A DNA stretch of 64,000 bases from IMGVR_UViG_3300028654_000001:372001-436000; one strand, 5' to 3'; shown: positions 4,843 through 30,416, counted from the first letter of the stretch. Notes: generated from the letters alone by a model not told the origin. Translations and numbers: made by a program.

Positions 4843-5470
4843 TCACCCCCAGGAATTTTGCCGGGGCGAGCACCCCTCTACCGACGTACGGGCCGAAACT
4901 AGACCGGATGCCCGACCCGTAGCGAGGTTGCTGCAAGCCTCGGATGATCTTCACAGTAGCCTTGGCTCTTTCAAGCTGGGCGGTGAATTGATCGATCAAG
5001 CTCTGTTTCATATCACTGTACTTAGCAGACTTCTCAAGATCCAAAGAAACACCTCCAATCGAGTAGCTATTGTGGGCCAAGATCCCATTCGCCAGTACGA
5101 AGTTCTCAGGACCGGGAACAGATAAATCATACATAAAAGGTCTAGAGAGCGCCTCTCTAACCCCAAGAATTAGCTCTTTACCTAGGAGGTCTCCTTGAAC
5201 CACAGCTATGGGTTCACGATCTTCAAACTTATTTGAGGGCTTTGCTACAGGGAGGAGACCCCTCATTGAAAACAAACTATGGTCTGTTGTAACAATAACC
5301 TGTCTTCCATCCAGTAAGGTAACTTGAACGCAATCTTTCTCACTAGAGGGATGCTTAAGGATTGCAGTAACCTTTGACTTAGTAACACGCCCAGTAGGGG
5401 TAACTGATCTAACCCGCAGTAGACCAGCCTGAAAAGCACTCTTGATTGCGGACCTAACTTCCGGTTTCAT
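4838..5470 (-). CDS. Split-intein C-precursor: IntC (~134 aa) plus 76-aa C-extein of a neck/adaptor protein
   Basis: Block B IVTTDHSLF; blocks F/G MYDLSVPGPENFVLANGILAHN|S; no block A. Likely start is ATG at 5470 after GAGGTG (ORF track starts at 5476). Confidence 0.9.
   Translation of the reverse strand: MKPEVRSAIKSAFQAGLLRVRSVTPTGRVTKSKVTAILKHPSSEKDCVQVTLLDGRQVIVTTDHSLFSMRGLLPVAKPSNKFEDREPIAVVQGDLLGKELILGVREALSRPFMYDLSVPGPENFVLANGILAHNSYSIGGVSLDLEKSAKYSDMKQSLIDQFTAQLERAKATVKIIRGLQQPRYGSGIRSSFGPYVGRGVLAPAKFLGVS
5069..5470 (-). mobile_element. C-terminal half of split intein (IntC)
   Basis: TxxH and terminal His-Asn (AAT at 5071-5069), followed by Ser+1. Confidence 0.9.
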
Positions 5471-6434
5471 AGACACCTCGCAAGGTCACAAGAAGGTCTC
5501 TGACCCTATCAACCCAAACAGAAAAGTCACCTGAATCATGCTCAGGAACCCTAAGAAGAGTCCAACCATGGTTCAGTAGATAGGTGGTCTTTCGTTTGTC
5601 CAACTTTGCAATATCAGGATTAGCTGTAAGACCGCAGATAGAACACCCATGCCAGTAACAACCATCAACCTCTATAGCCAGCTTTAGTTCAGAGAATGCT
5701 TCGTCAATATGGTAATAACCCACTCTGAACTCTCGTTGAAACCCATGAACACCAGCTTCAACTAAAGCCGCTTCAAACCTCTGATGGAGTTTAGAGAAAG
5801 TTCTCCTGATAAACCCACGAGCCTTAGCAGCAGATTCCCGTATCTCACCCCGGTGCTCTTTTTGATATAAGGCCTGCTTAGCTACAAAATCAGGATCTTT
5901 CCAGAGCTTAGCACTTCGCTCTCCTACTCTCATACGTGCCTCAGGGGTTTTATTATACTGAGTCAAATGAAGGGTAGCCCTTTCACGATAACCTGAGTCT
6001 TGCATCCGACGAGAAGCTTCAGCTATCTGATTCCGCGTCTTTTTCCCCTCAGGCGTTTGAAACCTAAGTTTAAGAGTTTCAGCTTGCGCTATCTTCTGAG
6101 CTTCAGTCTTCTTTTTTTTAGCACGAGTAACTGATGAAGTTAGAGCAGCATTTGGCCACTTTTCCTGGTATTGGCTGAGTGTCAAACCGGAACAGGACTT
6201 TAGATGCTTAGTAGAGATACTTGCTTGTTTTCCTCTACACTCAAGGCAAGTAACGAAGTGCTCACCTTCTATAAGATTACTTAGACTACTCTCTACAATT
6301 GCTGACCCGACAGAACCAGAGCTAACTAATACCCCAGCCGATACTAGGTTGATCAATGCACGTTGATTCATTCCAAACTGAGTAGTTACACTCAATCTTG
6401 ACCTACAACCGATTGGAACCCTAAAACCAGCCAT
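5454..6434 (-). CDS. Free-standing Vsr/DUF559-type homing endonuclease with N-terminal Zn finger and NUMOD-like helical region
   Basis: CLECRGKQASISTKHLKSCSGLTLSQY (Zn finger); FQREFRVGYYHIDEAF..LAIEVDGCYWHG..DKRKTTYLLNHGWTLLRVPEHD (DUF559/Vsr core). Confidence 0.85.
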   Translation of the reverse strand: MAGFRVPIGCRSRLSVTTQFGMNQRALINLVSAGVLVSSGSVGSAIVESSLSNLIEGEHFVTCLECRGKQASISTKHLKSCSGLTLSQYQEKWPNAALTSSVTRAKKKKTEAQKIAQAETLKLRFQTPEGKKTRNQIAEASRRMQDSGYRERATLHLTQYNKTPEARMRVGERSAKLWKDPDFVAKQALYQKEHRGEIRESAAKARGFIRRTFSKLHQRFEAALVEAGVHGFQREFRVGYYHIDEAFSELKLAIEVDGCYWHGCSICGLTANPDIAKLDKRKTTYLLNHGWTLLRVPEHDSGDFSVWVDRVRDLLVTLRGVYETGS

Positions 6435-8770: not shown

Positions 8771-9190
8771 TCAGACTTCGGCCATCACCAGCGCACCCAT
8801 TGCAAACGAAACCTGGTCACCAGCGTTAATAACTTTGGGGGTAACAAGGGGTCCTTGATAAAGCATGTTACCAGCCGCCACGAGGTCACAGATCCCAACC
8901 CAACCAATGGCTGTTGACCCATAACCTGCTGTAGAGACTTCCCAGGTGATCGCTATTGAGTTAGCTACTGAGTTCCCAACTCCGATAGTTGCCCAAGTGA
9001 TTGGTTGACGAACATAATCCGTAACCCCAGCTCCTGTAGGGACCTCACCAAGAAATGACCCTGATACAGTCGGGTCTGAAGTTAACAGAGCGGCAAAGAC
9101 TGTAGTTGGCCAAGAATAAGCAAGCTCAGAGTTGTGCTTGAGAGCTTGGTCTAAAACCCTGCCAGCAAGGAATGTAGTTTTTGCGGCCAT
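8771..9190 (-). CDS. Small phage tail-fibre/virion structural protein
   Basis: Y.RQ.ITW..VANS.AITW..GWVGICD..GNMLY.GPL..PK.INAGD..SF..GAL pattern is typical of a widespread small tail/virion protein family. Confidence 0.65.
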   Translation of the reverse strand: MAAKTTFLAGRVLDQALKHNSELAYSWPTTVFAALLTSDPTVSGSFLGEVPTGAGVTDYVRQPITWATIGVGNSVANSIAITWEVSTAGYGSTAIGWVGICDLVAAGNMLYQGPLVTPKVINAGDQVSFAMGALVMAEV

Positions 9191-12164: not shown

Positions 12165-12185
12165 CCGGTGAACAGGGTTCACTGG
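12165..12185 (-). promoter_or_regulatory. Leader hairpin (9-bp stem, CCT triloop) upstream of structural gene
   Basis: CCAGTGAAC-CCT-GTTCACCGG on the minus strand, just downstream of a GATCTTCTTATAC motif. Confidence 0.4.
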
Positions 12186-12455
12186 AACAAGGGGTATAAG
12201 AAGATCAACCGGGGATACTCATCCTAGACCCCGTGGACCCCCCACAGGGCCACGCATCTAATATCAATTAAACCAAAAGTGGTGGTTTGAGAGGCTGTTG
12301 TGTTAGTGACCCTGAGAGGTGTTGTTGCTCTTCACCCAAGGATTGCTAGTTAGTTGATATGACTATTACCAATGTTAGACGGGGACACTGAATTTATAAG
12401 TACTTCTACGAATAGAGGTGTAATTAGAAACGGGCACAAGTACTAGGCTAAGAAT

Positions 12456-15400
12456 ATGACTATCGCTGGTATCAAAGTTCTCATAGTTGGAAAACAATTC
12501 GAACTCCCATATGACGTTGTTAATCTAGAGGGTACAGCACACCTACTCGAAACAATTGCCACTTTTAGGCCGGACGTTATAGTCACCTCAGACTACATAC
12601 CTGGATCTCTTACTATGGCTTGTTACGATCTCAGGAAGAGGTGGATCCATATACCCCCTGATGTATCAAATAAAGAACTTTGCGCAAATATTGAGAGTTG
12701 CTACTCTTTCAACATTTGGACAGAGCAGGAGTTTTCAAAAGACCACCCTATGGTCTCGGTCTACACCCCAACCCATGACACTGGAGATTACCTGCAAGAT
12801 ACCTTTCAGTCACTAAGAAGTCAGACCTATGTGAACTGGGAATGGATCGTTGTAGACGACCAATCCTCTGACAAGACCTGGGCTAGACTTCAAGAATTTG
12901 CAGCTCAGGATTACCGGATTAGACCTTTTCAAAGTGGAATACACCTAGGAAAGATCGGAGCTCTCAAAGATCTGACAACCAGACTGTGCAGGGGGAAGTA
13001 CTTAGTTGAGTTAGATCATGACGACATGCTTACGGAAACCGCTCTTGAAGAGGTGAAAAACACCTTCGAGGCCAACCCAGATGTTGGCATGGTCTACACA
13101 AATAGCGCATCATTCTATGAGAACGGGTCCCCTCAACGCTTTAATGGATCCCCTTGGGATGCTCCTGATAGGTATCGTGAAGTCGAGTACCACGGACGAA
13201 AGTATTTAGAGTGCAGCAATCCAAATATTTATGACCGCTTTGGACCTCACTTCACTCAAGTGTTCGGCTGGTTCCTCACGGTAGGCCCTCATCACATCAG
13301 AGCCTTTCGTGCAGAGACCTTTCGTCAACTAGGAGGCTACAACCCAGAGCTCCCCATCGCCGATGATTGGGACCTGTATGCTAGGTTCTTCCTGGAATCC
13401 AAGTGCTTTCACTTGGATAAGCTCCTGTACTTGTACCGATATCGAGACGGATTTGGAAATGTAACGTTCCAACGTCTCCAGTCTATCCAGGATCATTTAG
13501 CCCTAGGCCGAAACCACTATATGGATAAGTTCAAGAATAAGAACGATGAGTTACTAGCTAATCACCCACCCATGGTTCCTAATCCTATCTCAACAAGTGT
13601 TGGAGAGAAGAGCACGTCTGCTGATCTATCCTTCGTTGTCCTTGATGCCACGGGAAGCCAGAATGCCATTGATTGCTTGAAAAGCTTGAGATATTATGCC
13701 CCTGATGCGGAGATCATACTTGTTGAGAACGGTTGTAGGTCAAAAGCTAGCAATGAGGCCAACATAGTTCTTGAGAGTTCTCACAATCTGGGTTTTGGCG
13801 GGGGGTGCAACCTAGGAGCCTGTGCGGCCAATCGTCCGTATCTGTGCTTCATTAATGATGACGCGGTACTCGTGGACACAGTGACCGTCCCGAAGCTTCT
13901 AGACGCTGCCAAGAAAAACTCCATAGCTGGGAGCTACTCGGACAGAGCAAAGCCCCCCCAAGGTGACTGGTCCCATGACTCAGTCCCAAAGGATGACAAG
14001 GCCCTGCCCATGGTAGCCGGGCTCTGCATGGTATTGTCCAAGAGCCTGTTTGACTCCCTAGGTGGTTTTGACCCAAGGTTCATGACGTGGGAAGACGACG
14101 ACTTTTGTGTTAGGGCTGGACGCCTTGGGGTGACCAGCGTGGCTGTAGGAGGGGCCTTCGTACACCACAAGGGCCACCGGACCTTCGAAACTATGAAGTT
14201 GGACCATGTAGCAGTCGAAGCTGAGAACCAGAGACTCTTCAGAGTGAAACACCAGAAGATCAAGGTCATCGCCATTGCCAAGAATGAGGAAAATTGCATT
14301 GTCGAGTTCTTCAAGCAGTTCGAGTCAATCACGAGTAGTTGGTACATGCTTGACACGGGGTCGACGGATAGGACTGTTGAATTAGCCAAGTCTATTGGAG
14401 TAGAGGTAGTCAAAGGTCCATTCACAGACTTTGCAACTACTCGTAACCAAGCTTTGAAGCTATTTGACTCAGAAAATAGCTGGGTCATCATGCTCGACCC
14501 CGACGAACGTTTGGACAAGCGCACCATTGAAGCTATCCCCGAGCTGATCTTCAACAGGCGTATCGTCTCACAGAGCGTATTTGATACCTATCTTGCTCCT
14601 TTGACTGCTGTCTATCCGGATGGGAATAGGAAAGAGTTCGTGGCCAAGCCCTTCCTGTTCAAGAACAACCCTACTTCTAGATGGGTCTTCAAAGTTCATG
14701 AGAAGTGGATCACTAAGGATCATTGCTCGAACTATGGTCAGTGCGCGATAGTCACCAATGCACTCATCGAGCATAGGATTGAGTTTCACACGGGCAAGCA
14801 TCGTGATGGAGCTGAAGGATTGTACTCCAGGTTGATGTCAGAAGAGCCCTACTTTCAAGACTTGGACTACAAGACCCGGATGCGCGAGGAGTTCCCAATA
14901 CTTGACTATGACCGCACTGAGGATCCACGAATAACCAAGATACAAGCAGGGCCCTTAGTCAGCGTAGTGATCCCTACTTACAAGCGAACAGACCTCTTGA
15001 GGAAAGCAGTACTATCCGCTCTGACTCAATCCTACAAGACTCTGGAAGTCATCATTGTTGGAGATCACTGTCCAGAACTGGATTCAGCTGCATTCGGAGA
15101 ATGGCCCTACTCAGAAGAACCTCGAGTTAGAGTTGTCAACTTGGCAAAGAATTACGGAGCTGGTGGTGCAGAGCCTAGAAACGTAGCAATCAATCTAGCC
15201 GCTGGGCCCTACATCGCCTATTTGGACGATGACAACACCTGGGCAAAGGACCACGTGAGCAACTTACTGACTACCATCTTGGCTGAGAACAGTATCTGGG
15301 GTTGGTCGTCGATGATGGTGAACGGGATTGATATGGTGTTTGACCGATTAGAGAAAGGCAAGATCGATACCTCGTGTGTCATTCACCACAAGAGTCTCAT

Positions 15401-16217
15401 ACTAAAACACGGTGGGTGGAAGCCCCGAACCGAAGCGAACTACTGGCATGACTACGAGCTGTTCTCACGTTGGAGAGAGGAGCCTCAAACGGTAACCAGG
15501 TACCCGTCAGTTAACTATAATGCTAGTGCTTCGGGCCAAGGAGCTTTTCTGGCTAGTCTGACCTCTTCAGATCGAGTCACCGACATCCCATTTGAACCCC
15601 TAACTTCCATACCATCAGAACCAAACCTCTTGACCATTGGTATTCTCAGTTTGGAGTTCCGAGCTGAAATGCTAAATAAGTTGCTACAAGAGCTAGAGAG
15701 TCAAAGAAGTGCCCTCCCCTTTCCTGACTCAGTAAGAATCGTAAAAGTGGATACTAGAGAGGCCACTGTTGGTGAAAAACGACAGAAGATCATAAATGAA
15801 TGCAGTACTGAGTATCTATGCTTCGTAGATGACAATGACATGATTGAGCACAATTACCTAAGCTCAATCCTACGAGCTCTCAAAGACAATCCAGACTGTG
15901 TAACCTTCAAAGGCATAATCACCACGGACAGTAAGAACCCAGAGCTATTCCGCTTATCCTTGCATTACTCAATAGGGGCTTGGTCCAAAGATGTTCAGGG
16001 AACTCACATGCGAACCCCCAATCATCTATGTCCAATGAAGGTTAAGTTAATGAGGAGAGTGGCTTATCAGGACATCACTTCATATGAGGATGCTCTCTGG
16101 GGTATGTGGATCTACCCACTATTACACAGCCAGTGTCACATTGACGAAGTTCTTTACCACTACCAGTACAGCCCAACTGGGTCTGAAGCAGCTAAGAAAG
16201 CACCAAAGCTCATGTGA
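12456..16217 (+). CDS. Multidomain glycosyltransferase with five tandem GT2 (GT-A fold) domains
   Basis: Domain starts VSVYTPTHD, LSFVVLD, IKVIAIAKNEE, VSVVIPTYKR and LTIGILSL; acidic DxD-type motifs LDHDD, INDDA, LDPDE, LDDDN and VDDND. Confidence 0.9.
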   Translation: MTIAGIKVLIVGKQFELPYDVVNLEGTAHLLETIATFRPDVIVTSDYIPGSLTMACYDLRKRWIHIPPDVSNKELCANIESCYSFNIWTEQEFSKDHPMVSVYTPTHDTGDYLQDTFQSLRSQTYVNWEWIVVDDQSSDKTWARLQEFAAQDYRIRPFQSGIHLGKIGALKDLTTRLCRGKYLVELDHDDMLTETALEEVKNTFEANPDVGMVYTNSASFYENGSPQRFNGSPWDAPDRYREVEYHGRKYLECSNPNIYDRFGPHFTQVFGWFLTVGPHHIRAFRAETFRQLGGYNPELPIADDWDLYARFFLESKCFHLDKLLYLYRYRDGFGNVTFQRLQSIQDHLALGRNHYMDKFKNKNDELLANHPPMVPNPISTSVGEKSTSADLSFVVLDATGSQNAIDCLKSLRYYAPDAEIILVENGCRSKASNEANIVLESSHNLGFGGGCNLGACAANRPYLCFINDDAVLVDTVTVPKLLDAAKKNSIAGSYSDRAKPPQGDWSHDSVPKDDKALPMVAGLCMVLSKSLFDSLGGFDPRFMTWEDDDFCVRAGRLGVTSVAVGGAFVHHKGHRTFETMKLDHVAVEAENQRLFRVKHQKIKVIAIAKNEENCIVEFFKQFESITSSWYMLDTGSTDRTVELAKSIGVEVVKGPFTDFATTRNQALKLFDSENSWVIMLDPDERLDKRTIEAIPELIFNRRIVSQSVFDTYLAPLTAVYPDGNRKEFVAKPFLFKNNPTSRWVFKVHEKWITKDHCSNYGQCAIVTNALIEHRIEFHTGKHRDGAEGLYSRLMSEEPYFQDLDYKTRMREEFPILDYDRTEDPRITKIQAGPLVSVVIPTYKRTDLLRKAVLSALTQSYKTLEVIIVGDHCPELDSAAFGEWPYSEEPRVRVVNLAKNYGAGGAEPRNVAINLAAGPYIAYLDDDNTWAKDHVSNLLTTILAENSIWGWSSMMVNGIDMVFDRLEKGKIDTSCVIHHKSLILKHGGWKPRTEANYWHDYELFSRWREEPQTVTRYPSVNYNASASGQGAFLASLTSSDRVTDIPFEPLTSIPSEPNLLTIGILSLEFRAEMLNKLLQELESQRSALPFPDSVRIVKVDTREATVGEKRQKIINECSTEYLCFVDDNDMIEHNYLSSILRALKDNPDCVTFKGIITTDSKNPELFRLSLHYSIGAWSKDVQGTHMRTPNHLCPMKVKLMRRVAYQDITSYEDALWGMWIYPLLHSQCHIDEVLYHYQYSPTGSEAAKKAPKLM

Positions 16218-16337
16218 GAACCAACGGAGGCACCTTCAGGTAATGAACACGTAATGTTTTTGGCTCAACATGACCCGAAAACAGCAATCGAGTGTATCTA
16301 TATGAGTACACTCGATTGCTGTAAAACCATTTCACTT

Positions 16338-16991
16338 TTATCGCCAACGACCACCAGCACATGCAAAGGCGAACGCATAAGCGGAAGCCCATGCACATGC
16401 ATCAGCCTCAGCCCAAACGCAAATGGGATTAGCATTACCAATCACACATTGATTGCCATTTATAATAGCAATGATTCCTGGAACACACGCTTGTACTTTT
16501 ACCGACGCACATGCCTGGAAAGAAGCCCAAGCCGCAGCTTCCACGCAAAATGCACCCCAACCACCAGGAAAGATTACACCACCAGCTCCGCACACTACAC
16601 CACCGGCTCCAGCTGCACAAGCAGCAAGACCTGCTTGGAAGCCCGCCTGAGCACCTTGTACAGCGGCTTGTGGTGGAACATCAGGACAGTTGGGCCAACA
16701 CCCCAACGGACACCCAAGGCCAGCATTAGCCCAGGGTACGTTTGGATCTTGTTGTCCGCATGCTTCGGTGCAAACCCCGCTAGTACCTCCTATATCTGAA
16801 GTTCCTCCTGTATTTGAAGTTCCTCCTGTATTTGAAGTACCTCCTGCAGTACTTAGGTTACTTCTGGTACCACCAGAAGCTATACTGTTGCCACCAGAAC
16901 CCTGCATTGATGCCTGAGCTGTAGCTACAAGTTCTAAAGGGCTGGTGTTTGAGCATGCACACGACAACAAGAGTAGACTAAAGTATTTCAT
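16338..16991 (-). CDS. Cys/Ala/Gly-rich putative lipoprotein
   Basis: MKYFSLLLLSCAC signal/lipobox-like start, GGTSNT repeats, many Cys in a hydrophobic C-terminal half. Confidence 0.7.
   Translation of the reverse strand: MKYFSLLLLSCACSNTSPLELVATAQASMQGSGGNSIASGGTRSNLSTAGGTSNTGGTSNTGGTSDIGGTSGVCTEACGQQDPNVPWANAGLGCPLGCWPNCPDVPPQAAVQGAQAGFQAGLAACAAGAGGVVCGAGGVIFPGGWGAFCVEAAAWASFQACASVKVQACVPGIIAIINGNQCVIGNANPICVWAEADACAWASAYAFAFACAGGRWR
16784..16850 (-). repeat. 18-bp tandem repeat encoding GGTS(N/D)(T/I)
   Basis: gaagttcctcctgtattt repeated, with degenerate flanking copies. Confidence 0.7.
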
Positions 16992-16993
16992 AA

Positions 16994-17278
16994 TTAACCC
17001 ACCTTTTCTTTACGTTCGACCACACTTGTAGATATAACTAACACACTAAGTAACCCTAATACTAGGCACAAGTAGGCCAAGTAAGATGTACCTTCGACAA
17101 CATTACCTACTCGTCTTCTGACAATCGAGGGTGTACCCCCGAGCGAAGGTGTGGTACCCCCGACCCCGAATGTACCCCCGACCCCGGCTGCACCTGCATC
17201 CATAACTGTGGTTAACGAGAGGAAACCGAAAACCAAGAGCAGTACAAGTATGGCTAGTTTAAATCGTTTCATTATCAA
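16994..17278 (-). CDS. Small membrane protein (two hydrophobic segments, GGT-rich loop)
   Basis: LAILVLLLVFGFLSL and YLAYLCLVLGLLSVLVI segments. Confidence 0.6.
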   Translation of the reverse strand: MIMKRFKLAILVLLLVFGFLSLTTVMDAGAAGVGGTFGVGGTTPSLGGTPSIVRRRVGNVVEGTSYLAYLCLVLGLLSVLVISTSVVERKEKVG

Positions 17279-19560
17279 TTTGGAAGTAGCAAACCATAGA
17301 TATAAATGTCGACATCACCATCAGTGACAGTGCCAACAACCGTAATGTTGCAGTAGATAACCTGATTATAGTTATACACCGCCTCATAAGCATTCAAAGA
17401 AGTCATGCCTGAGCCGAGCGATGCAATAGCTTCTCCAGCAATGACTGTTAGTACGCTTGCCGAAGTAACTGTAACTGGATTGATGATTTGGGTACCACCC
17501 GAGGTCGAACCGATAGAAACAGTCACGTTACCTGCTCCAACAACCGCTACAGACAAGCGCAAAATACAACGAGTCAGAATAAATCTACCCGACCCAGTTG
17601 GAGAGGGGACCGTATAGATCCCAACTGTTCGAGTTCCAGCAGAAAACCCGACTCGGGAAGTTACTTGCAAGCCGGTGTCGCCCTGGAATCCTTGCCAACC
17701 CTGATTTCCTTGGTTTCCTTGAAATCCGAGGTTACCCTGATTTCCTTGAAATCCGATGTTGCCTTGAAATCCGATGTTACCCTGATTTCCTTGATTTCCG
17801 ATGTTGCCTTGGGATCCGATGTCACCCTGATTTCCTTGGTTTCCTTGGAATCCGATGTCACCCTGATTTCCTTGGAATCCGAGGTTGCCTTGGATTCCGA
17901 GGTTACCCTGATTTCCTTGGTTGCCTTGAAATCCGAGGTTACCCTGATTTCCTTGGTTGCCTTGGGATCCGAGGTTACCCTGATTTCCTTGGTTGCCTTG
18001 GGATCCGAGGTTACCCTGATTTCCTTGGAATCCGAGGTTACCTTGATTTCCTTGGAATCCGAGGTTACCCTGATTTCCTTGCCTACCCTGATTTCCTTGG
18101 TTTCCCTGAAATCCTGTTAGACCAGTTGCCCCAAAACCCCTCATCACTTGAGTCCCGGAACCACTATAAGCAACCGCTACGAATAACCCTCCCCCGTAAG
18201 TTACGGAAGTCCACCCTGATACCTGTGATGGGGTACTGTCAACCCAATTAATGCCATCACTGGACCTCATCACTTGAGTCCCGGAACCACCATTAGCAAC
18301 CGCTACGAATAATCCTCCCCCGTAAGTTACGGAAGCCCAAGTTGCAACCTGTGATGGGGTACTGTCAACCCAATTAATACCATCACTGGACCTCATCACT
18401 TGCGTTCCGGAACTACTATAAGCAACCGCTACGAACAATCCTCCCCCGTAAGCTACGGAAGTCCACCCTGATACCTGTGATGGGGTACTATTGAACCAAT
18501 TAATGCCATCACTGGACCTCATCACTTGAGTCCCAGAACCACTATAAGCAACCGCTACGAATAATCCTCCCCCGTAAGCTACGGAAGTCCACCATGACAC
18601 CTGTGATGGGGTACTATTGAACCAATTAATGCCATCACTGGACCTCATCACTTGAGTCCCAGAACCACTATAAGCAACCGCTACGAATAATCCTCCCCCG
18701 TAAGCTACGGAAGTCCACCATGACACCTGTGATGGGGTACTATTGAACCAATTAATGCCATCACTGGACCTCATCACTTGAGTCCCGGAACTACTATAAG
18801 CAACTGCTACGAACAATCCTCCCCCGTAAGCTACAGAAGTCCAAGCTGCAACCTGTGATGGGGTACTGTCAACCCAATTAGTACCATCACTGGACCTCAT
18901 CACTTGCGTCCCAGAACCACTATTAGCAACTGCTACGAATAACCCTCCCCCGTAAGCTACAGATTCCCAAGTTGCAACCTGTGATGGGGTACTGTCAACC
19001 CAAGTAATAACTATAGGGATACCTGCTAACCCTTGTCTACCCTGATTCCCTTGTCTACCCTGCCATCCTTGGTTACCTTGAGGACCCTGATTCCCTTGTC
19101 TACCCTGCCATCCTTGGTTACCTTGAGGACCCTGATTCCCTTGAACCCCTGATCCAATGATTCCCTGCCACCCTTGGTTCCCTTGGTTCCCTTGGTTCCC
19201 TTGGTTCCCAGACAATCCGGAATCCCCTTGCGAGCCTTGAACTCCTGTACCCTGGAAGCCCTGATTACCCTGGACTCCAATCAATCCGACGTCTCCTTGG
19301 TTTCCTTGGTTCCCCTGATTGCCCTGCCATCCTTGCGGGCCTTGTGATCCTTGGTTCCCTTGGAATCCGATGTTACCTTGCCAACCCTGATTTCCCTGAT
19401 CTCCCGTCCCTTGGAAGCCCTGGACTCCTTGAGATCCGGTTGACCCAACATCTCCCTGATGCCCTTGGTTTCCTTGAGAGCCAGTTAACCCGGTGAGACC
19501 TTGGTTTCCCTGCCAACCTTGGTTGCCTTGGTCTAATTTCAGTTTGTTGACAAGATACAT
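17275..19560 (-). CDS. Collagen-like fibre protein with internal 7-repeat beta-propeller
   Basis: G-x-Q triplet tracts flank seven 42-aa WxxSxPSQVxxWxSVxYGGGLFVAVA repeats; C-terminal beta domain. Confidence 0.85.
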   Translation of the reverse strand: MYLVNKLKLDQGNQGWQGNQGLTGLTGSQGNQGHQGDVGSTGSQGVQGFQGTGDQGNQGWQGNIGFQGNQGSQGPQGWQGNQGNQGNQGDVGLIGVQGNQGFQGTGVQGSQGDSGLSGNQGNQGNQGNQGWQGIIGSGVQGNQGPQGNQGWQGRQGNQGPQGNQGWQGRQGNQGRQGLAGIPIVITWVDSTPSQVATWESVAYGGGLFVAVANSGSGTQVMRSSDGTNWVDSTPSQVAAWTSVAYGGGLFVAVAYSSSGTQVMRSSDGINWFNSTPSQVSWWTSVAYGGGLFVAVAYSGSGTQVMRSSDGINWFNSTPSQVSWWTSVAYGGGLFVAVAYSGSGTQVMRSSDGINWFNSTPSQVSGWTSVAYGGGLFVAVAYSSSGTQVMRSSDGINWVDSTPSQVATWASVTYGGGLFVAVANGGSGTQVMRSSDGINWVDSTPSQVSGWTSVTYGGGLFVAVAYSGSGTQVMRGFGATGLTGFQGNQGNQGRQGNQGNLGFQGNQGNLGFQGNQGNLGSQGNQGNQGNLGSQGNQGNQGNLGFQGNQGNQGNLGIQGNLGFQGNQGDIGFQGNQGNQGDIGSQGNIGNQGNQGNIGFQGNIGFQGNQGNLGFQGNQGNQGWQGFQGDTGLQVTSRVGFSAGTRTVGIYTVPSPTGSGRFILTRCILRLSVAVVGAGNVTVSIGSTSGGTQIINPVTVTSASVLTVIAGEAIASLGSGMTSLNAYEAVYNYNQVIYCNITVVGTVTDGDVDIYIYGLLLPN
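17680..18117 (-). repeat. Collagen-like G-N-Q/G-F-Q 9-bp-unit repeat tract
   Basis: Direct repeats such as ccctgatttccttgg and ccgaggttaccctg. Confidence 0.9.
18139..19002 (-). repeat. Seven 126-bp tandem repeats (beta-propeller blades)
   Basis: Near-identical 126-bp units; units 3 and 4 give identical translations. Confidence 0.95.
19022..19527 (-). repeat. Collagen-like G-x-Q repeat tract (N-terminal)
   Basis: GNQGWQGRQGNQGPQ repeats. Confidence 0.9.
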
Positions 19561-28109: not shown

Positions 28110-30416
28110 TCAGGTCTTCTTATAACAGCCGTTCAACGTCAGCCGTGTGGTCTTTGAAATAGTCTCAATCCCAAACTTATGACGAAGTTTCCTAATGGCT
28201 ACTTTAGATACGCTATAAAGTTTAGCGATCTGGTCATCACTATTGCGAAGGTATAGGTCTGAAAGAACATCCTTGGTCAACGAATCAAAAGAAAGGCTCC
28301 CAGAGGCCTTGGCACTTCTCTGGGTAAAGCTAATTGTTTGGATCCCCCACCGCTTTCGCTGCTGAGAGATCAAAACATCCGAAGTCCCGAATCTCTTACC
28401 GATCTCAGCATCAGTCATTAATTGGGCCTCGTACAACTCTCTCAAAGCGGCCTCAGTCAACCCAGATACCTTGGTATCACAGGTCTCTTTCTTATTGGGC
28501 TCTTTTGGTAGTTGGTAACAAGGAACCAAACACGTCCCCCCACCCTTCAGAAAGACTAAAATAGGTTCCATTCTATGATGACTACCGAAAGAGCCAAGCT
28601 TCATCTCAAGAGTACCCTCATACTCAAACCCGCACAGCTCGGCCATTCTAATTGACTCACTAACCAAAGGCAGTTGGGATCCATCAACTTGGATATCAGC
28701 CACATTAAGTAGCAGTCTTCCACCTGGGGCCAGACTGTTGAAGGACTTAGCTAGTAGTACAGAGAGAAATCTACTCAACCATAGATCCCAAGTTGGGTAA
28801 CGAACCCAACTCTGAGATGGATCATTGGAGTACCGCTCAACAGAAAAGTACGGAGGGCTAGTGAGAACCAAGTCAGCCTGAATATCACCTAGGTCTACCT
28901 CCTCAATTGGTTGATTGAAGAAAGTTAGGTTGACTCCTAGTAAATCCTGCAACTTTTGAAAAGACTCCCCAGCCTTCGGGTGAGGATCAACCCCAATATA
29001 TCGACGACCTGCTGCCAAAGCTCCGACAGCCCTACCCCCATATCCAGCACAGGGATCCAACACTAAACCACCAACTGAGGAGAAGTCCTCTACCAACCTC
29101 TTAGCAATAGCTGGTCTAAAGTTGGAAGGGGTTCGTACTATAGCTCGAAGTGCTCGAAATACATTCATTGGATACAGAGGGTCCCCAACTTTCAATTGGA
29201 AGTCTACAGCTCTTCGAATCAAGGCGGGGTCAAACCAAGCCCTAGTAAGAGATGGATTCTGTCCGTTGGTCGCTTCAAATCTATGTGGGAAGGCGGCCTG
29301 ACATACTGCTAACCCTACTCGACCACCCCCCTCAATCACCCCGTCACTTACTTTCGCCAAGGTTCTATGGCGTAGATTAGTGAAGTCCCTAACAACCTCA
29401 TCGTCAGAAGGCGGCTCTGGTAGCTTGAGTGAGGTTAGCAACTCAATCAAGGGTTCACCTTGCAACCCAGAATCTACGATACCTTTTGCTTCTTCCCAGG
29501 TAGGAATATACTTCGAGGTGTCTATTACAAAACCTGAACTTTTAACCGATCTTCGTACGGTATCGACCGAAGACCCTGTTGCCTGAGAAATCCACTCTAA
29601 GGATCGACCTTGCTCAACATAGTCACCAAGTTGATCCCTTAGTAAGTCAGCCGAAGATAGACCCCTAGCCCTGGGCACTAGTTCCAACTTATAGCCCATT
29701 GAAGGGGGGATATGAGGGGCTACCAAGTCCAAGAACCTGGTAAGGCTCTCACGATCGTGCAGCCATATATCAGCATCGTTAGTCTTGTAGAGTACAGGTA
29801 CGAGCCCAAACCGTTTCAGGAGTTCGAGTTGAACTTGTTGATCCTCGGGCCTTGGTGAAACAGAAAACCTAACATACCCGTTGGAGGTTTTTGAGCCATC
29901 ATCCAAGAACCAAATGGCCAAAGAGAAGGCATCAAACTCCGCAAGATCTATGTTGGAGAAGGACTTGTTCCCAGAACCATCAGGGTAGGCTTGCTTCCAA
30001 TAGGGGTATAAGTCCCTGGAACTATGCAGAGTCAGGCGAGATCCTGTATAGGTAACCCCATTCTTCACCGTCTTAGCTGGTTTGACTGAGCAAAGATGAT
30101 CGCCCCAAAGGGCGGCTTTCCAAGAGATGTAGTCATGCTGTTGGTCCGAGTGGTATTCACAGAGGCTTGCTGTGCAATCACTGCGAGAGGTGAGCCCAGC
30201 ATCTCCGAGTAGAGAGCCCAAGAGGAGAGTCTTCTGTAGTTGGGTCAGGGGCGGCAACTTCAAACGATCCGACTTTTGAATAGTCTGGATCTGGTACTTC
30301 ATTCTTCGTAGACTCACCTGCCTCTGACTCAACCCATACAACAAACCAATCTTGATCTCGGATAACCCATCATCCAGGTAAAGCCTGCGAAGTTCGGCTT
30401 CAGTGACGTCTGCCAT
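28110..30416 (-). CDS. LAGLIDADG endonuclease - amino DNA methyltransferase fusion with HTH repeats
   Basis: LLLGSLLGDAGL and LAIWFLDDG (LAGLIDADG); SNFRPAIAK, VLDPCAGYGG (motif I) and LTSPPYF (motif IV); HTH at the N-terminus and two at the C-terminus. Confidence 0.85.
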   Translation of the reverse strand: MADVTEAELRRLYLDDGLSEIKIGLLYGLSQRQVSLRRMKYQIQTIQKSDRLKLPPLTQLQKTLLLGSLLGDAGLTSRSDCTASLCEYHSDQQHDYISWKAALWGDHLCSVKPAKTVKNGVTYTGSRLTLHSSRDLYPYWKQAYPDGSGNKSFSNIDLAEFDAFSLAIWFLDDGSKTSNGYVRFSVSPRPEDQQVQLELLKRFGLVPVLYKTNDADIWLHDRESLTRFLDLVAPHIPPSMGYKLELVPRARGLSSADLLRDQLGDYVEQGRSLEWISQATGSSVDTVRRSVKSSGFVIDTSKYIPTWEEAKGIVDSGLQGEPLIELLTSLKLPEPPSDDEVVRDFTNLRHRTLAKVSDGVIEGGGRVGLAVCQAAFPHRFEATNGQNPSLTRAWFDPALIRRAVDFQLKVGDPLYPMNVFRALRAIVRTPSNFRPAIAKRLVEDFSSVGGLVLDPCAGYGGRAVGALAAGRRYIGVDPHPKAGESFQKLQDLLGVNLTFFNQPIEEVDLGDIQADLVLTSPPYFSVERYSNDPSQSWVRYPTWDLWLSRFLSVLLAKSFNSLAPGGRLLLNVADIQVDGSQLPLVSESIRMAELCGFEYEGTLEMKLGSFGSHHRMEPILVFLKGGGTCLVPCYQLPKEPNKKETCDTKVSGLTEAALRELYEAQLMTDAEIGKRFGTSDVLISQQRKRWGIQTISFTQRSAKASGSLSFDSLTKDVLSDLYLRNSDDQIAKLYSVSKVAIRKLRHKFGIETISKTTRLTLNGCYKKT

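What the first reader, a model, noticed from the sequence alone, without database searches (positions are those of the whole stretch)
12456..16217. Five-domain GT2 glycosyltransferase 'assembly line' on the opposite strand within the structural module
One 1253-aa polypeptide contains five divergent GT-A domains, each keeping an acidic DxD-type motif. It is the only large plus-strand gene, so it has its own expression control. Such a tandem could build a defined oligosaccharide on virion proteins (shielding from host or immune recognition), on phage DNA bases, or on the host envelope (superinfection exclusion). No sugar-nucleotide genes are visible in this window.
Basis: partly seen in the sequence, partly recalled or inferred. 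Interest (0 to 1): 0.65.

Follow-up and report, generated by a model that had tools for sequence, protein, structure and literature searches.

The report
Five-module glycosyltransferase beside collagen-like phage fibre
A 512-kb phage encodes one soluble protein made of five intact sugar-adding enzymes, and gene neighbourhoods in phages and bacteria suggest it decorates the phage's collagen-like tail fibre with a short sugar chain.

Summary
Window 12456-16217 (+) is a 1253-aa ORF with five GT2/GT-A domains, each above Pfam's cut-off. Each keeps a DxD-type motif that is invariant, or nearly so in D2, across relatives.

The window lies in a 512,571-bp phage record with terminal repeats. This is that genome's only GT2 or GT1 gene. 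The genome has no NDP-sugar genes, no thymidylate-synthase-type hydroxymethylase and no detected TET/JBP match.

The protein belongs to a large family, mostly on viral contigs, built as N-terminal domain + D1, a variable slot, then D2-D3-D4, sometimes plus D5. D5, or a methyltransferase/GT2_5 module, is shuffled between positions.

- **Main new lead.** The genome's only collagen-like gene, a (Gly-X-Gln)n tail fibre, lies 1 kb downstream. In all six whole records tested, collagen-like genes lie near the fused gene.
- **Specificity.** Stand-alone D1-type enzymes lie beside collagen-like genes in 27 of 62 viral loci and 43-44 of 80 bacterial loci. The figure for D5-type control loci is 2 of 79.
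- **Bacterial counterpart.** Thermoactinomycetaceae isolates carry D1, D4, D3 and D2 types as separate genes beside a giant collagen-like gene.

Best reading: a fused pathway that glycosylates the collagen-like fibre, using host sugar nucleotides. The target is inferred, not shown. DNA modification is unlikely.

The parts
12456..16217 (+). Whole gene: 1253-aa soluble five-domain GT2 glycosyltransferase (P0001)
   Evidence: ORF and translation. PF00535 matches five stretches. No membrane segment: maximum Kyte-Doolittle(19) is 1.39. AlphaFold2 models of residues 1-600 and 596-1253 have mean pLDDT 86.4 and 85.6.
12456..12740 (+). N-terminal domain (aa 1-95): small beta-alpha-beta domain of unknown role, always fused to D1 in this family
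   Evidence: No Pfam hit. Modelled at pLDDT about 90 with strands 7-11, 20-24, 41-44 and 63-65 and helices 30-37 and 72-88. Invariant residues A35, F37, P39, D40. The Atlas search gave nothing.
12741..13565 (+). D1 (aa 96-370): GT-A domain with DxD D187-H-D189-D190 and candidate base D303/D304. This is the family type linked to collagen-like genes
   Evidence: PF00535 83 bits. PDB sequence hit to the K4CP chondroitin polymerase A2 domain, E 2e-19. VIA Z 23.9 to 2z86/2z87, Z 21-22 to WrtF, RmlT, CgT and SpsA. Invariant D134, D135, D187, H188, D189, D190, D303, D304. Collagen linkage.
13611..14255 (+). D2 (aa 386-600): GT-A domain with N467-D468-D469 and W-E546-D547-D548. Its fold is closest to polypeptide GalNAc-transferases
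   Evidence: PF00535 31.9 bits; Glyco_transf_7C 27.9 bits in the whole-protein scan but 22.1 bits, below its 23-bit cut-off, in the piece scan. VIA Z 20-21, rmsd 2.6-2.8 over about 207 residues to GalNAc-T2 (6nqt, 2ffu, 4d0t), T4, T10, T12 and PGANT9A. No PDB hit by sequence.
14256..14945 (+). D3 (aa 601-830): GT-A domain with D681-P-D683-E684, of the Glyco_tranf_2_4 / GmaR-like type
   Evidence: PF00535 35.6 bits. Best PDB sequence hit is entry 22ao, named GmaR, E 5.9e-6. Invariant D633, G635, S636, D638, D681, D683, E684, H748, E749, K750. Its fold was not resolved separately in the structure search.
14946..15575 (+). D4 (aa 831-1040): GT-A domain with D924-D925-D926 and candidate base H998-D999
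   Evidence: PF00535 68.6 bits. VIA Z 24.2 to WrtF, 23.4 to SpsA, 22-23 to AvpGT, CgT, RmlT and TarP. Invariant D870, D924-D926, H998, D999.
15618..16214 (+). D5 (aa 1055-1253): accessory GT-A module with D1125-D1126-N-D1128 and E1211-D1212. Mobile within the family
   Evidence: phrog_14775 144 bits and PF00535 23.8 bits. D1125, D1126, D1128, E1211 and D1212 are conserved in 49 D5 segments. The module is C-terminal here but sits between D1 and D2 in many relatives. Stand-alone D5-type viral loci are not linked to collagen-like genes: 2 of 79.
12170..12215 (+). Conserved block in the 332-bp upstream gap, including TATAAGAAGATCA, 261 nt before the ATG. Possible promoter or leader element
   Evidence: Conserved in the upstream regions of relatives L010 and L011. 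Occurs only once in the 512-kb genome. No sigma-70-like site lies in the gap.
16281..16322 (.). 17-bp perfect hairpin between the convergent GT gene and the 217-aa gene. Likely a bidirectional terminator
   Evidence: Sequence. RNAfold gives -27.6 kcal/mol.
17275..19560 (-). Proposed acceptor: 761-aa collagen-like tail fibre (P0119). Layout is (G-X-Q)n, seven propeller-like repeats, (G-X-Q)n, then a C-terminal domain
   Evidence: PF01391 167 bits and tail-fibre PHROGs up to 237 bits. It is the only collagen-like gene in the 512-kb genome. Gln fills 71% of Y positions.
16338..17278 (-). Two small ORFs (217 aa and 94 aa) at the end of the fibre operon, between the fibre and the GT gene. Hypervariable
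   Evidence: No Pfam or PHROG hit. No counterpart in the 82%-identical relative L010, although the flanking genes are syntenic.

Best explanation
The gene encodes a soluble cytoplasmic enzyme in which five catalytically competent GT2 (GT-A) modules are fused behind a small N-terminal domain. It draws on host sugar nucleotides, because the phage encodes none. It most likely builds a short, defined oligosaccharide of up to five sugars, one step per module.

The most likely acceptor is the phage's own collagen-like (Gly-X-Gln)n tail fibre, encoded 1 kb away, modified before or during virion assembly. D1, with its N-terminal domain, is the module tied to collagen-like proteins and is the best candidate for the substrate-specific step. 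D2, whose fold resembles polypeptide GalNAc-transferases, and D3, which resembles GmaR, are alternative initiators. D4 and D5 probably extend the chain.

Shown: the domain architecture, motif conservation, the family and its module shuffling, the absence of precursor genes, and the genomic linkage to collagen-like genes. Inferred: the acceptor, the residue modified, the sugars, the order of steps and the biological benefit (fibre stability, or masking or tuning of receptor recognition).
For: **Five intact modules.**
- PF00535 hits five stretches, each above its cut-off.
- DxD motifs and candidate bases are invariant or near-invariant in 28 relatives down to 43% identity.
- Models have pLDDT 86, and the GT-A fold gives Z 20-24 for D1, D2 and D4.

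**Soluble and dependent on the host.**
- No membrane segment.
- The 512-kb genome has no PF01370, PF00483 or PF00534 match and no other PF00535 match.

**A real, modular family.**
- Over 100 clusters, on contigs up to 465 kb.
- Variants are N-terminal domain + D1, a slot, D2-D3-D4, with or without D5. The slot holds D5 or a GT2_5 + methyltransferase insert.

**Linkage to collagen-like genes.**
- The genome's only collagen-like gene lies 1.06 kb from the GT gene.
- A collagen-like ORF lies within 10 kb in 9 of 13 related loci.
- In all six whole records tested, collagen-like genes lie 1.4-6.8 kb from the GT gene. The combined p is 1.3e-4, assuming independence.
- Stand-alone D1-type GTs have a collagen-like ORF nearby in 27 of 62 viral loci, mostly within 2 kb, and in 43-44 of 80 bacterial loci with only 6-kb flanks.
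- D5-type viral GT control loci show 2 of 79. Fisher odds ratio 30, p 8e-10.

**Gene-fusion evidence.**
- Thermoactinomyces, Baia and Croceifilum isolates carry D1, D4, D3 and D2 types as separate genes beside a giant collagen-like gene; Paenibacillus albiflavus carries D1, D2 and D3 types.
- Of two loci checked (Thermoactinomyces L138, Paenibacillus L162), both also hold methyltransferase genes (GT2_5-fused in L138), plus an acetyltransferase (L138) or a nucleotidyltransferase (L162).

**Precedent.**
- C. difficile SgtA is a GT-A enzyme encoded next to bclA3. It adds O-GlcNAc to Thr in collagen repeats (PMC7157674).
- Chlorovirus A064R and A111/114R are three-domain virion-glycan enzymes, and mimivirus L230 glycosylates viral collagen (PMC9614988).
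Against: - There is no biochemical or proteomic evidence. The acceptor rests on gene neighbourhood only.
- The fibre's repeats are G-X-Gln with few Ser or Thr (about 13% of triplets). This is unlike the GPT repeats that SgtA modifies, so the acceptor residue is unclear.
- D1 and D4 are closest in sequence and fold to polysaccharide, teichoic-acid and lipid-linked glycan enzymes (K4CP, PmHS2, SpsA, TarP/TarS, RmlT, PglI), not to proven protein glycosyltransferases.
- Collagen-like genes are common in large phages even without a D1-type GT (3 of 5 control records). Genome-level co-occurrence is therefore not significant (p 0.083).
- Five large records with a D1-type GT have their nearest collagen-like gene 21-41 kb away.
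- The related phage records share ancestry, so the whole-record test overstates independence.
- Both genes may simply share a variable host-recognition island.
Confidence: 0.55

Rival explanations
1. The enzyme glycosylates other virion proteins, such as capsid, tail tube or sheath subunits, as in mycobacteriophages. Its position near the fibre gene is incidental to sitting in the late structural region.
For: The gene lies in the structural region: portal, terminase, protease-like and fibre genes. Virion glycosylation of capsid and tail-tube C-termini by phage GTs is known (Freeman 2023, as cited in PMC12619734). Some D1-type loci have no collagen-like gene within 10 kb.
Against: It does not explain why D1-type GTs sit beside collagen-like genes in chromosomal bacterial loci. 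It also does not explain the 44% versus 2.5% contrast with another viral GT2 type.
Confidence: 0.15
2. The enzyme acts on the host: it builds or alters a cell-surface polysaccharide or lipid-linked glycan during infection, for example for superinfection exclusion or receptor masking.
For: D1 and D4 resemble polysaccharide and teichoic-acid enzymes, and NCBIfam's best but sub-threshold hits are TuaG, PgaC, WcaA and PglI. PHROG hits for D1 include 'GtrB-like O-antigen conversion'.
Against: The protein has no membrane segment. The genome has no other GT1 or GT2 gene. Flippase and polymerase genes were not searched for. The gene sits in a late structural region rather than an early or moron position. 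The collagen linkage would be left unexplained.
Confidence: 0.12
3. The enzyme glycosylates phage DNA bases to evade restriction.
For: Phage GTs commonly do this, and multi-sugar DNA glycans are known (Pyle 2024, as cited in PMC12619734).
Against: The genome has no thymidylate-synthase-family gene, and therefore no dCMP or dUMP hydroxymethylase, and no detected TET/JBP match. The TET/JBP control rang nowhere, so that blank is weak. The gene lies among structural genes rather than nucleotide-metabolism genes.
Confidence: 0.03
4. The gene is a passenger or decaying gene, recently taken from a host LPS/EPS locus, with most domains inactive.
For: D5's PF00535 score only just clears the cut-off.
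Against: The catalytic motifs of D1-D4 are invariant or at least 90% conserved, and D5's DxD invariant, across relatives as low as 43% (D1-D4) or 28% (D5) identity. GC and GC3 lie within one SD of the genome mean. There are over 100 relative clusters, the closest on large phage-like contigs. Synteny is conserved in close relatives.
Confidence: 0.02

Closest known systems
C. difficile SgtA with the BclA3 exosporium collagen-like glycoprotein (and, more broadly, BclA glycosylation in Bacillus)
   Same: A soluble, metal-dependent GT-A enzyme is encoded next to a collagen-like surface-fibre gene and glycosylates the collagen repeat region (PMC7157674). The bacterial loci found here, in spore-forming Thermoactinomycetaceae and Paenibacillus, look like this kind of locus.
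   Different: SgtA is a single GT-A domain plus TPR repeats, and it modifies Thr in GPT repeats. This protein has five GT-A domains and no detected TPR, and its fibre is G-X-Gln.
Chlorovirus PBCV-1 A064R (Rha-T, Rha-T, methyltransferase) and A111/114R (Gal-T, Xyl-T, Fuc-T)
   Same: These are virus-encoded, soluble, multi-domain enzymes in which each domain adds or tailors one sugar of a glycan on a virion protein (PMC9614988). Relatives of this protein likewise carry inserted methyltransferase modules.
   Different: The chlorovirus enzymes come from eukaryotic viruses, have three domains, and build N-linked capsid glycans. This is a tailed phage with five GT2 domains and a different presumed acceptor. 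Sequence homology was not tested.
Mimivirus L230 (lysyl hydroxylase plus glucosyltransferase acting on viral collagen-like protein)
   Same: A virus encodes both collagen-like proteins and an enzyme that glycosylates them (PMC9614988).
   Different: L230 needs hydroxylysine and adds a single glucose. No hydroxylase domain is present here, and Lys is not among the common residues in the fibre's repeats.
Bifunctional GT2 polysaccharide polymerases: E. coli K4 chondroitin polymerase (2z86) and Pasteurella heparosan synthase PmHS2 (8vh7)
   Same: They have tandem GT-A domains in one soluble polypeptide. They are the best sequence and structure matches for D1 and D4: E 2e-19, Z 23.9.
   Different: They have two domains that alternate to make a long repeating polymer. 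This protein has five divergent domains of four or five subtypes, shuffled between relatives, which fits a defined oligosaccharide better. The relative domain orientation differs (rmsd over 20 Å for two-domain superpositions).
Mycobacteriophage virion glycosylation (Freeman et al. 2023, cited through PMC12619734)
   Same: Phage-encoded GTs act on virion proteins.
   Different: In that system the glycans sit at the capsid and tail-tube C-termini. This is one fused five-domain enzyme in a huge phage, linked to a collagen-like fibre.

Membership tests
GT2 / GT-A fold glycosyltransferases (Pfam PF00535) | Significant match to the family profile for each proposed domain | tested here: met
   Five stretches, each above the 23.3-bit cut-off when scanned alone: 83.1, 31.9, 35.6, 68.6 and 23.8 bits. 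The same five were found by the whole-genome search.
GT2 / GT-A fold glycosyltransferases (Pfam PF00535) | GT-A Rossmann-like fold | tested here: met
   Met for D1, D2 and D4: models at pLDDT about 86 with VIA Z 20-24 to solved GT2 and GT27 enzymes. For D3 and D5 only the beta-alpha-beta secondary structure and the profile hits support it, because D4 filled the hit list.
GT2 / GT-A fold glycosyltransferases (Pfam PF00535) | DxD-type metal and nucleotide-sugar binding motif, conserved | tested here: met
   DHDD 187-190, NDD 467-469, DPDE 681-684, DDD 924-926 and DDND 1125-1128. These are invariant or at least 90% conserved in relatives.
GT2 / GT-A fold glycosyltransferases (Pfam PF00535) | Catalytic base and measurable transferase activity | not testable with these tools
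   Conserved acidic candidates are D303/D304, E546-D548, E749, D999 and E1211/D1212.
SgtA-like collagen-repeat O-glycosyltransferases | Gene adjacent to a collagen-like protein gene | tested here: met
   The gap to the genome's only collagen-like gene is 1.06 kb. The pattern recurs in relatives and in bacterial loci.
SgtA-like collagen-repeat O-glycosyltransferases | GT-A domain followed by TPR repeats | tested here: not met
   No TPR family appears in the Pfam scans of the whole protein or its pieces.
SgtA-like collagen-repeat O-glycosyltransferases | Acceptor has Thr-rich G-P-T repeats, and O-GlcNAc transfer is demonstrated | tested here: not met
   The fibre's Y position is 71% Gln and 5% Thr. 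Transfer cannot be tested here. Some D1-linked collagens elsewhere are Thr- or Ser-rich.
Phage DNA glycosyltransferase systems (hmC/hmU- or TET/JBP-dependent) | The genome encodes a route to a hydroxymethylated base | tested here: not met
   PF00303 is absent, with its control ringing in 10 of 14 genomes. PF12851 gave no hit, but its control rang nowhere, so that blank is weak.
Gtr-type O-antigen conversion (GtrB-like) | Membrane-anchored bactoprenol glucosyltransferase working with a flippase partner | tested here: not met
   D1 gives weak PHROG hits to 'GtrB-like' families, but the protein has no hydrophobic segment (maximum KD19 1.39). The genome has no other GT2 gene. A flippase partner was not searched for.
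Named NCBIfam glycosyltransferase equivalogs (TuaG, PgaC, WcaA, PglI, AglJ and others) | Score above the curated equivalog cut-off | tested here: not met
   The best scores are 23-66 bits against cut-offs of 70-600 bits for all five domains.

The most novel reading that the evidence does not exclude
The D1-type GT2 would define a widespread, so far unrecognised glycosylation system for collagen-like fibres, shared by bacteria (spore-formers, actinobacteria, deltaproteobacteria and others) and phages. Huge phages would have fused the whole multi-gene pathway (D1, D2, D3, D4, with or without D5 or a methyltransferase) into one polypeptide. Shuffling of its modules would diversify the fibre glycan. 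Because the linked collagens are mostly Gly-X-Gln, the linkage chemistry could itself be unusual.
Probability: 0.4. Interest if true: 0.75.

Novelty: new variant of a known kind. Interest (0 to 1): 0.66.

Why it matters
Glycosylation of phage virions is known from only a few systems. A review of prokaryotic collagen-like proteins states that they are mostly unglycosylated (PMC8968730).

If this reading is right, three things follow:
- A single gene would encode a complete oligosaccharide pathway for a receptor-binding fibre in the largest phages.
- The same enzyme type would mark collagen-like surface fibres for glycosylation across many bacteria.
- The module shuffling offers a natural set of variants for studying how glycan structure is programmed.

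It also gives concrete, culturable test organisms in Thermoactinomyces, Baia, Croceifilum and Paenibacillus isolates. A self-contained five-step enzyme could also be useful for glyco-engineering.

Tried and rejected
- **Megablast against the phage collection.** The region found no match.
- **ESM Atlas search.** The N-terminal domain gave nothing usable, so its role stays open.
- **Promoter and terminator scan.** It found no more sites than shuffled sequence and none in the upstream gap. The 'own promoter' idea rests only on a conserved block and a hairpin.
- **Genome-level co-occurrence of D1-type GTs and collagen-like genes.** This looked perfect at 11 of 11 records. However, 3 of 5 control phage records without a D1-type GT also carry collagen-like genes, giving p 0.083. 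I rely on proximity, not co-occurrence.
- **Structure searches on the two half-protein models.** These resolved D1, D2 and D4 only.
- **Naming the domains from NCBIfam.** No domain reaches an equivalog cut-off, so no donor sugar is assigned. The weak Rhamnosyl O-methyltransferase hit in relatives' inserts is only a hint.
- **Alternative genetic code.** Read-through of TGA raises long-ORF coverage in the first 175 kb of the genome, but removing the commonest stop does that anyway. The gene of interest is open under code 11, so no other code was used.
- **Not run.** Complex prediction was not run, since an enzyme meeting a repetitive collagen chain is a poor case for it. The large representative-protein search was unnecessary because the word search had already found the family. 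No reads tools were used.

Full report
**1. The observation**

Window 12456-16217 (+) is an uninterrupted 1253-codon ORF. Pfam's GT2 profile PF00535 matches five separate stretches. When the protein is cut into pieces, each scores above the 23.3-bit gathering threshold:

| Domain | Residues | PF00535 bits | Acidic motif |
|---|---|---|---|
| D1 | 96-370 | 83.1 | D187-H-D189-D190 |
| D2 | 386-600 | 31.9 | N467-D468-D469 |
| D3 | 601-830 | 35.6 | D681-P-D683-E684 |
| D4 | 831-1040 | 68.6 | D924-D925-D926 |
| D5 | 1055-1253 | 23.8 | D1125-D1126-N-D1128 |

D2 also matches Glyco_transf_7C, above that family's 23-bit cut-off only in the whole-protein scan (27.9 bits; 22.1 bits in the piece scan). 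D5 is marginal for PF00535 but scores 144 bits to the phage GT family phrog_14775. The first 95 residues match no family.

The gene is the only plus-strand gene inside about 107 kb of minus-strand genes.

**2. Context**

The window is positions 372,001-436,000 of a 512,571-bp IMG/VR virus record with direct terminal repeats, so this is a complete huge phage. Around the gene lie fibre and head genes:
- a gp80-like fibre protein at 8771-9190
- a collagen-like tail fibre at 17275-19560
- a protease-like protein, the portal and the large terminase further on

The five stretches are the only PF00535 matches in the whole genome. The genome has no GT1 (PF00534), no NDP-sugar epimerase or dehydratase (PF01370) and no sugar-1-phosphate nucleotidyltransferase (PF00483). 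It has no thymidylate-synthase-family gene. TET/JBP gave no match, but its control rang in no genome, so that blank is weak.

The protein has no hydrophobic segment. Its GC and GC3 are typical for the genome.

**3. Integrity of the domains**

The word-based homology search returned 117 other clusters, 108 of them with bit scores from 593 to 2489. Many sit on contigs of 100-465 kb. An alignment of 28 colinear members at 43-83% identity shows the DxD residues as invariant or at least 90% conserved, together with acidic residues at the position expected for the catalytic base:
- D1: D303/D304
- D2: E546-D548
- D3: E749
- D4: H998-D999

The first-Asp nucleotide-binding motifs are also conserved. 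D5's D1125, D1126, D1128 and E1211-D1212 are conserved across 49 D5 segments.

AlphaFold2 models of residues 1-600 and 596-1253 have mean pLDDT 86.4 and 85.6. Only the inter-domain linkers (371-386 and about 1038-1054) are disordered. Structure comparison gave these results:
- **D1:** Z 23.9 to the K4 chondroitin polymerase, and Z 21-22 to WrtF, RmlT, CgT and SpsA.
- **D2:** Z 20-21 to polypeptide GalNAc-transferases, with rmsd 2.6-2.8 Å over about 207 residues.
- **D4:** Z 23-24 to WrtF and SpsA.
- **D3 and D5:** not resolved in these lists.

By sequence, D3's best solved relative is the entry named GmaR, at E 5.9e-6. From my own knowledge, GmaR is the Listeria flagellin O-GlcNAc transferase. 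No domain reaches any NCBIfam equivalog cut-off, so donor sugars cannot be named.

**4. A modular family**

Mapping BLAST segments of all relatives onto P0001 shows a constant frame: N-terminal domain + D1, a variable slot, then D2-D3-D4. Four variants appear:
- the bare four-domain form, about 1000 aa
- this form, with D5 at the C-terminus, 1250-1320 aa
- a form with a D5-type module in the slot between D1 and D2, about 1210-1240 aa
- forms with a GT2_5 + Methyltransf_24 insert, or a class I methyltransferase, in that slot, 1400-1700 aa

In relatives the gene sits in larger islands with further GT2 genes, methyltransferases, a radical SAM enzyme and a 1511-aa GT2-GT1-GT2-GT1 protein. This is how a glycan-building and tailoring system behaves. 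It is not how a polymerase behaves.

**5. The target: linkage to collagen-like genes**

The 761-aa fibre at 17275-19560 is the only collagen-like gene in the 512-kb genome. It ends 1.06 kb from the GT gene.

*Related loci.* In 9 of 13 related multi-GT loci a collagen-like ORF lies within 10 kb. Several of the negatives are truncated contigs.

*Whole records.* PF01391 was searched over five entire records that carry relatives. Together with this genome, collagen-like genes lie 1.4-6.8 kb from the GT gene in all six records. In four of the five searched, every listed match lies within about 20 kb of the GT gene; the fifth has one outlier gene. The combined chance probability is 1.3e-4 if the records were independent. 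They are not fully independent, but the order and strand of the two genes differ among them.

*Repeat type.* All these collagens are of the Gly-X-Gln type, with Gln at 49-92% of Y positions.

*Stand-alone D1-type genes.* The same search showed that the N-terminal domain + D1 unit is common as a stand-alone gene.
- Among 62 such viral loci, 27 have a collagen-like ORF. It is usually within 2 kb and often directly upstream on the same strand.
- Among 80 loci from bacterial and archaeal genome assemblies, with only 6-kb flanks, 43-44 have one.
- As a control I fetched 79 viral loci around stand-alone D5-type GTs with the same flanks. Only 2 have a collagen-like ORF. Fisher odds ratio 30, p 8e-10.

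The link is therefore specific to the D1 type and is not a general property of phage GT2 genes.

**6. Gene-fusion evidence**

Domain-specific HMMs were built from the family alignment. With these, isolates of Thermoactinomyces sp. DSM 45892, Baia soyae and Croceifilum oryzae show a giant collagen-like gene flanked by separate genes of D1, D4, D3 and D2 type. Paenibacillus albiflavus shows D1, D2 and D3 types.

Two of these loci were checked for accessory genes. The Thermoactinomyces locus holds a methyltransferase + GT2_5 gene and a PglD-like acetyltransferase. The Paenibacillus locus holds a Methyltransf_24 gene, a sugar nucleotidyltransferase and an amino-acid permease, which suggests chromosomal rather than prophage context. 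The phage polypeptide thus looks like a fusion of a multi-gene bacterial pathway that accompanies collagen-like surface proteins.

**7. Mechanism proposed**

The protein is a soluble enzyme that uses host NDP-sugars. Its modules each add one sugar, giving a chain of up to five residues, on the phage's collagen-like fibre.

D1 occurs alone with collagen-like genes in 24 viral and 29 genomic loci. It is therefore the best candidate for the collagen-specific step. D2 (ppGalNAc-T-like fold) or D3 (GmaR-like) could be the initiator instead.

The acceptor residue is unknown. The fibre has few Ser or Thr in its repeats and many Asn and Gln. All of this paragraph is inference from architecture and neighbourhood.

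**8. Rivals**

- **Other virion proteins:** not excluded.
- **Host-envelope glycans:** D1 and D4 are nearest to polysaccharide and teichoic-acid enzymes. Against this, the protein has no membrane anchor.
- **DNA glycosylation:** lacks its precursor pathway in this genome.
- **Decay or recent transfer:** contradicted by conservation and composition.

Honest weaknesses remain. Collagen-like genes are frequent in large phages without D1-type GTs. Five records with D1-type GTs have their nearest collagen-like gene 21-41 kb away. So the association is strong but not universal.

**9. Comparison with known systems and novelty**

The closest precedents are these:
- C. difficile SgtA and BclA3, where a GT-A enzyme next to a collagen-like gene adds O-GlcNAc to Thr in the repeats (PMC7157674)
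- chlorovirus A064R and A111/114R, three-domain virion-glycan enzymes (PMC9614988)
- mimivirus L230, which acts on viral collagen (PMC9614988)
- mycobacteriophage virion glycosylation (cited in PMC12619734)

Literature searches combining collagen-like, glycosyltransferase and phage terms, or huge-phage terms, found no description of this family or of the linkage. A review states that prokaryotic collagen-like proteins are mostly not glycosylated.

I class this as a new variant of a known kind. Three elements appear to be new: a five-module fused GT2 in huge phages, its module shuffling, and the broad D1-type-to-collagen linkage.

**10. Expression**

The 332-bp upstream gap holds a block that is conserved in two close relatives and unique in the genome. 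A 17-bp hairpin of -27.6 kcal/mol separates the convergent genes. No sigma-70-like site was found. In more distant relatives the gene is co-oriented with its neighbours, so the opposite orientation is a feature of this sub-lineage and not of the family.

Noticed in passing
window 17275-19560 (-): The collagen-like fibre has an unusual layout: (G-X-Q)n, then seven near-identical repeats of about 44 aa with S-x-D-G-x-x-W-like motifs (EPTP and DUF6242 hits, probably a seven-bladed propeller), then a second (G-X-Q)n, then a C-terminal domain.
   Followed up: partly
window 16338-17278 (-): Two ORFs (217 aa and 94 aa) between the fibre and the GT gene have no family hit. They have no counterpart in the 82%-identical relative L010, although the flanking genes are syntenic. 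This is a hypervariable spot, possibly a receptor-binding tip or a chaperone.
   Followed up: partly
window 16281-16322: A perfect 17-bp inverted repeat (-27.6 kcal/mol) lies between the convergent GT gene and the fibre operon. It is likely a bidirectional terminator, although it has no clear T-run.
   Followed up: partly
window 12170-12215: A conserved block including TATAAGAAGATCA lies 261 nt upstream of the GT start. It is shared with relatives L010 and L011 and is unique in the 512-kb genome.
   Followed up: partly
window 28110-30416 (-): A 768-aa ORF combines DNA-methyltransferase, LAGLIDADG homing-endonuclease and HNH PHROG hits. It may be a methyltransferase invaded by an intein or homing endonuclease.
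   Followed up: no
window 5454-6434 (-): A 326-aa ORF with HNH and homing-endonuclease hits lies among the structural-region genes.
   Followed up: no
G000 genome 1-175,000 (outside the window): Long-ORF coverage under code 11 is only 0.42-0.70 here, against over 0.9 in the structural half, with many strand switches. It rises most when TGA is read through. The cause could be small genes or local recoding. This was not resolved, and no alternative code was adopted.
   Followed up: partly
L008 12599-17134 and L006 14325-17959: Relatives' glycosylation islands hold a 1511-aa GT2-GT1-GT2-GT1 protein, a radical SAM enzyme, a GT2_5 + Methyltransf_24 gene and three more single GT2 genes. This phage has none of them.
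   Followed up: no
L086 (MAG labelled Promethearchaeota, 121-kb contig) and L089 (MAG labelled Bordetella parapertussis, 161-kb contig): Both contigs carry relatives of the fused gene with a collagen-like ORF nearby. L086 holds the complete four-domain form; for L089 only a D3-D4 match (query residues 602-1037) was seen. They are probably huge-phage contigs binned into cellular MAGs.
   Followed up: no
L138, L155, L151, L162 (Thermoactinomyces, Baia, Croceifilum, Paenibacillus isolates): In these culturable spore-formers, giant collagen-like genes are flanked by operons of three to six GT2 genes. Of the two loci checked (L138, L162), both also hold methyltransferase genes, L138 an acetyltransferase and L162 a nucleotidyltransferase. 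They are candidate exosporium or appendage glycoprotein loci.
   Followed up: partly
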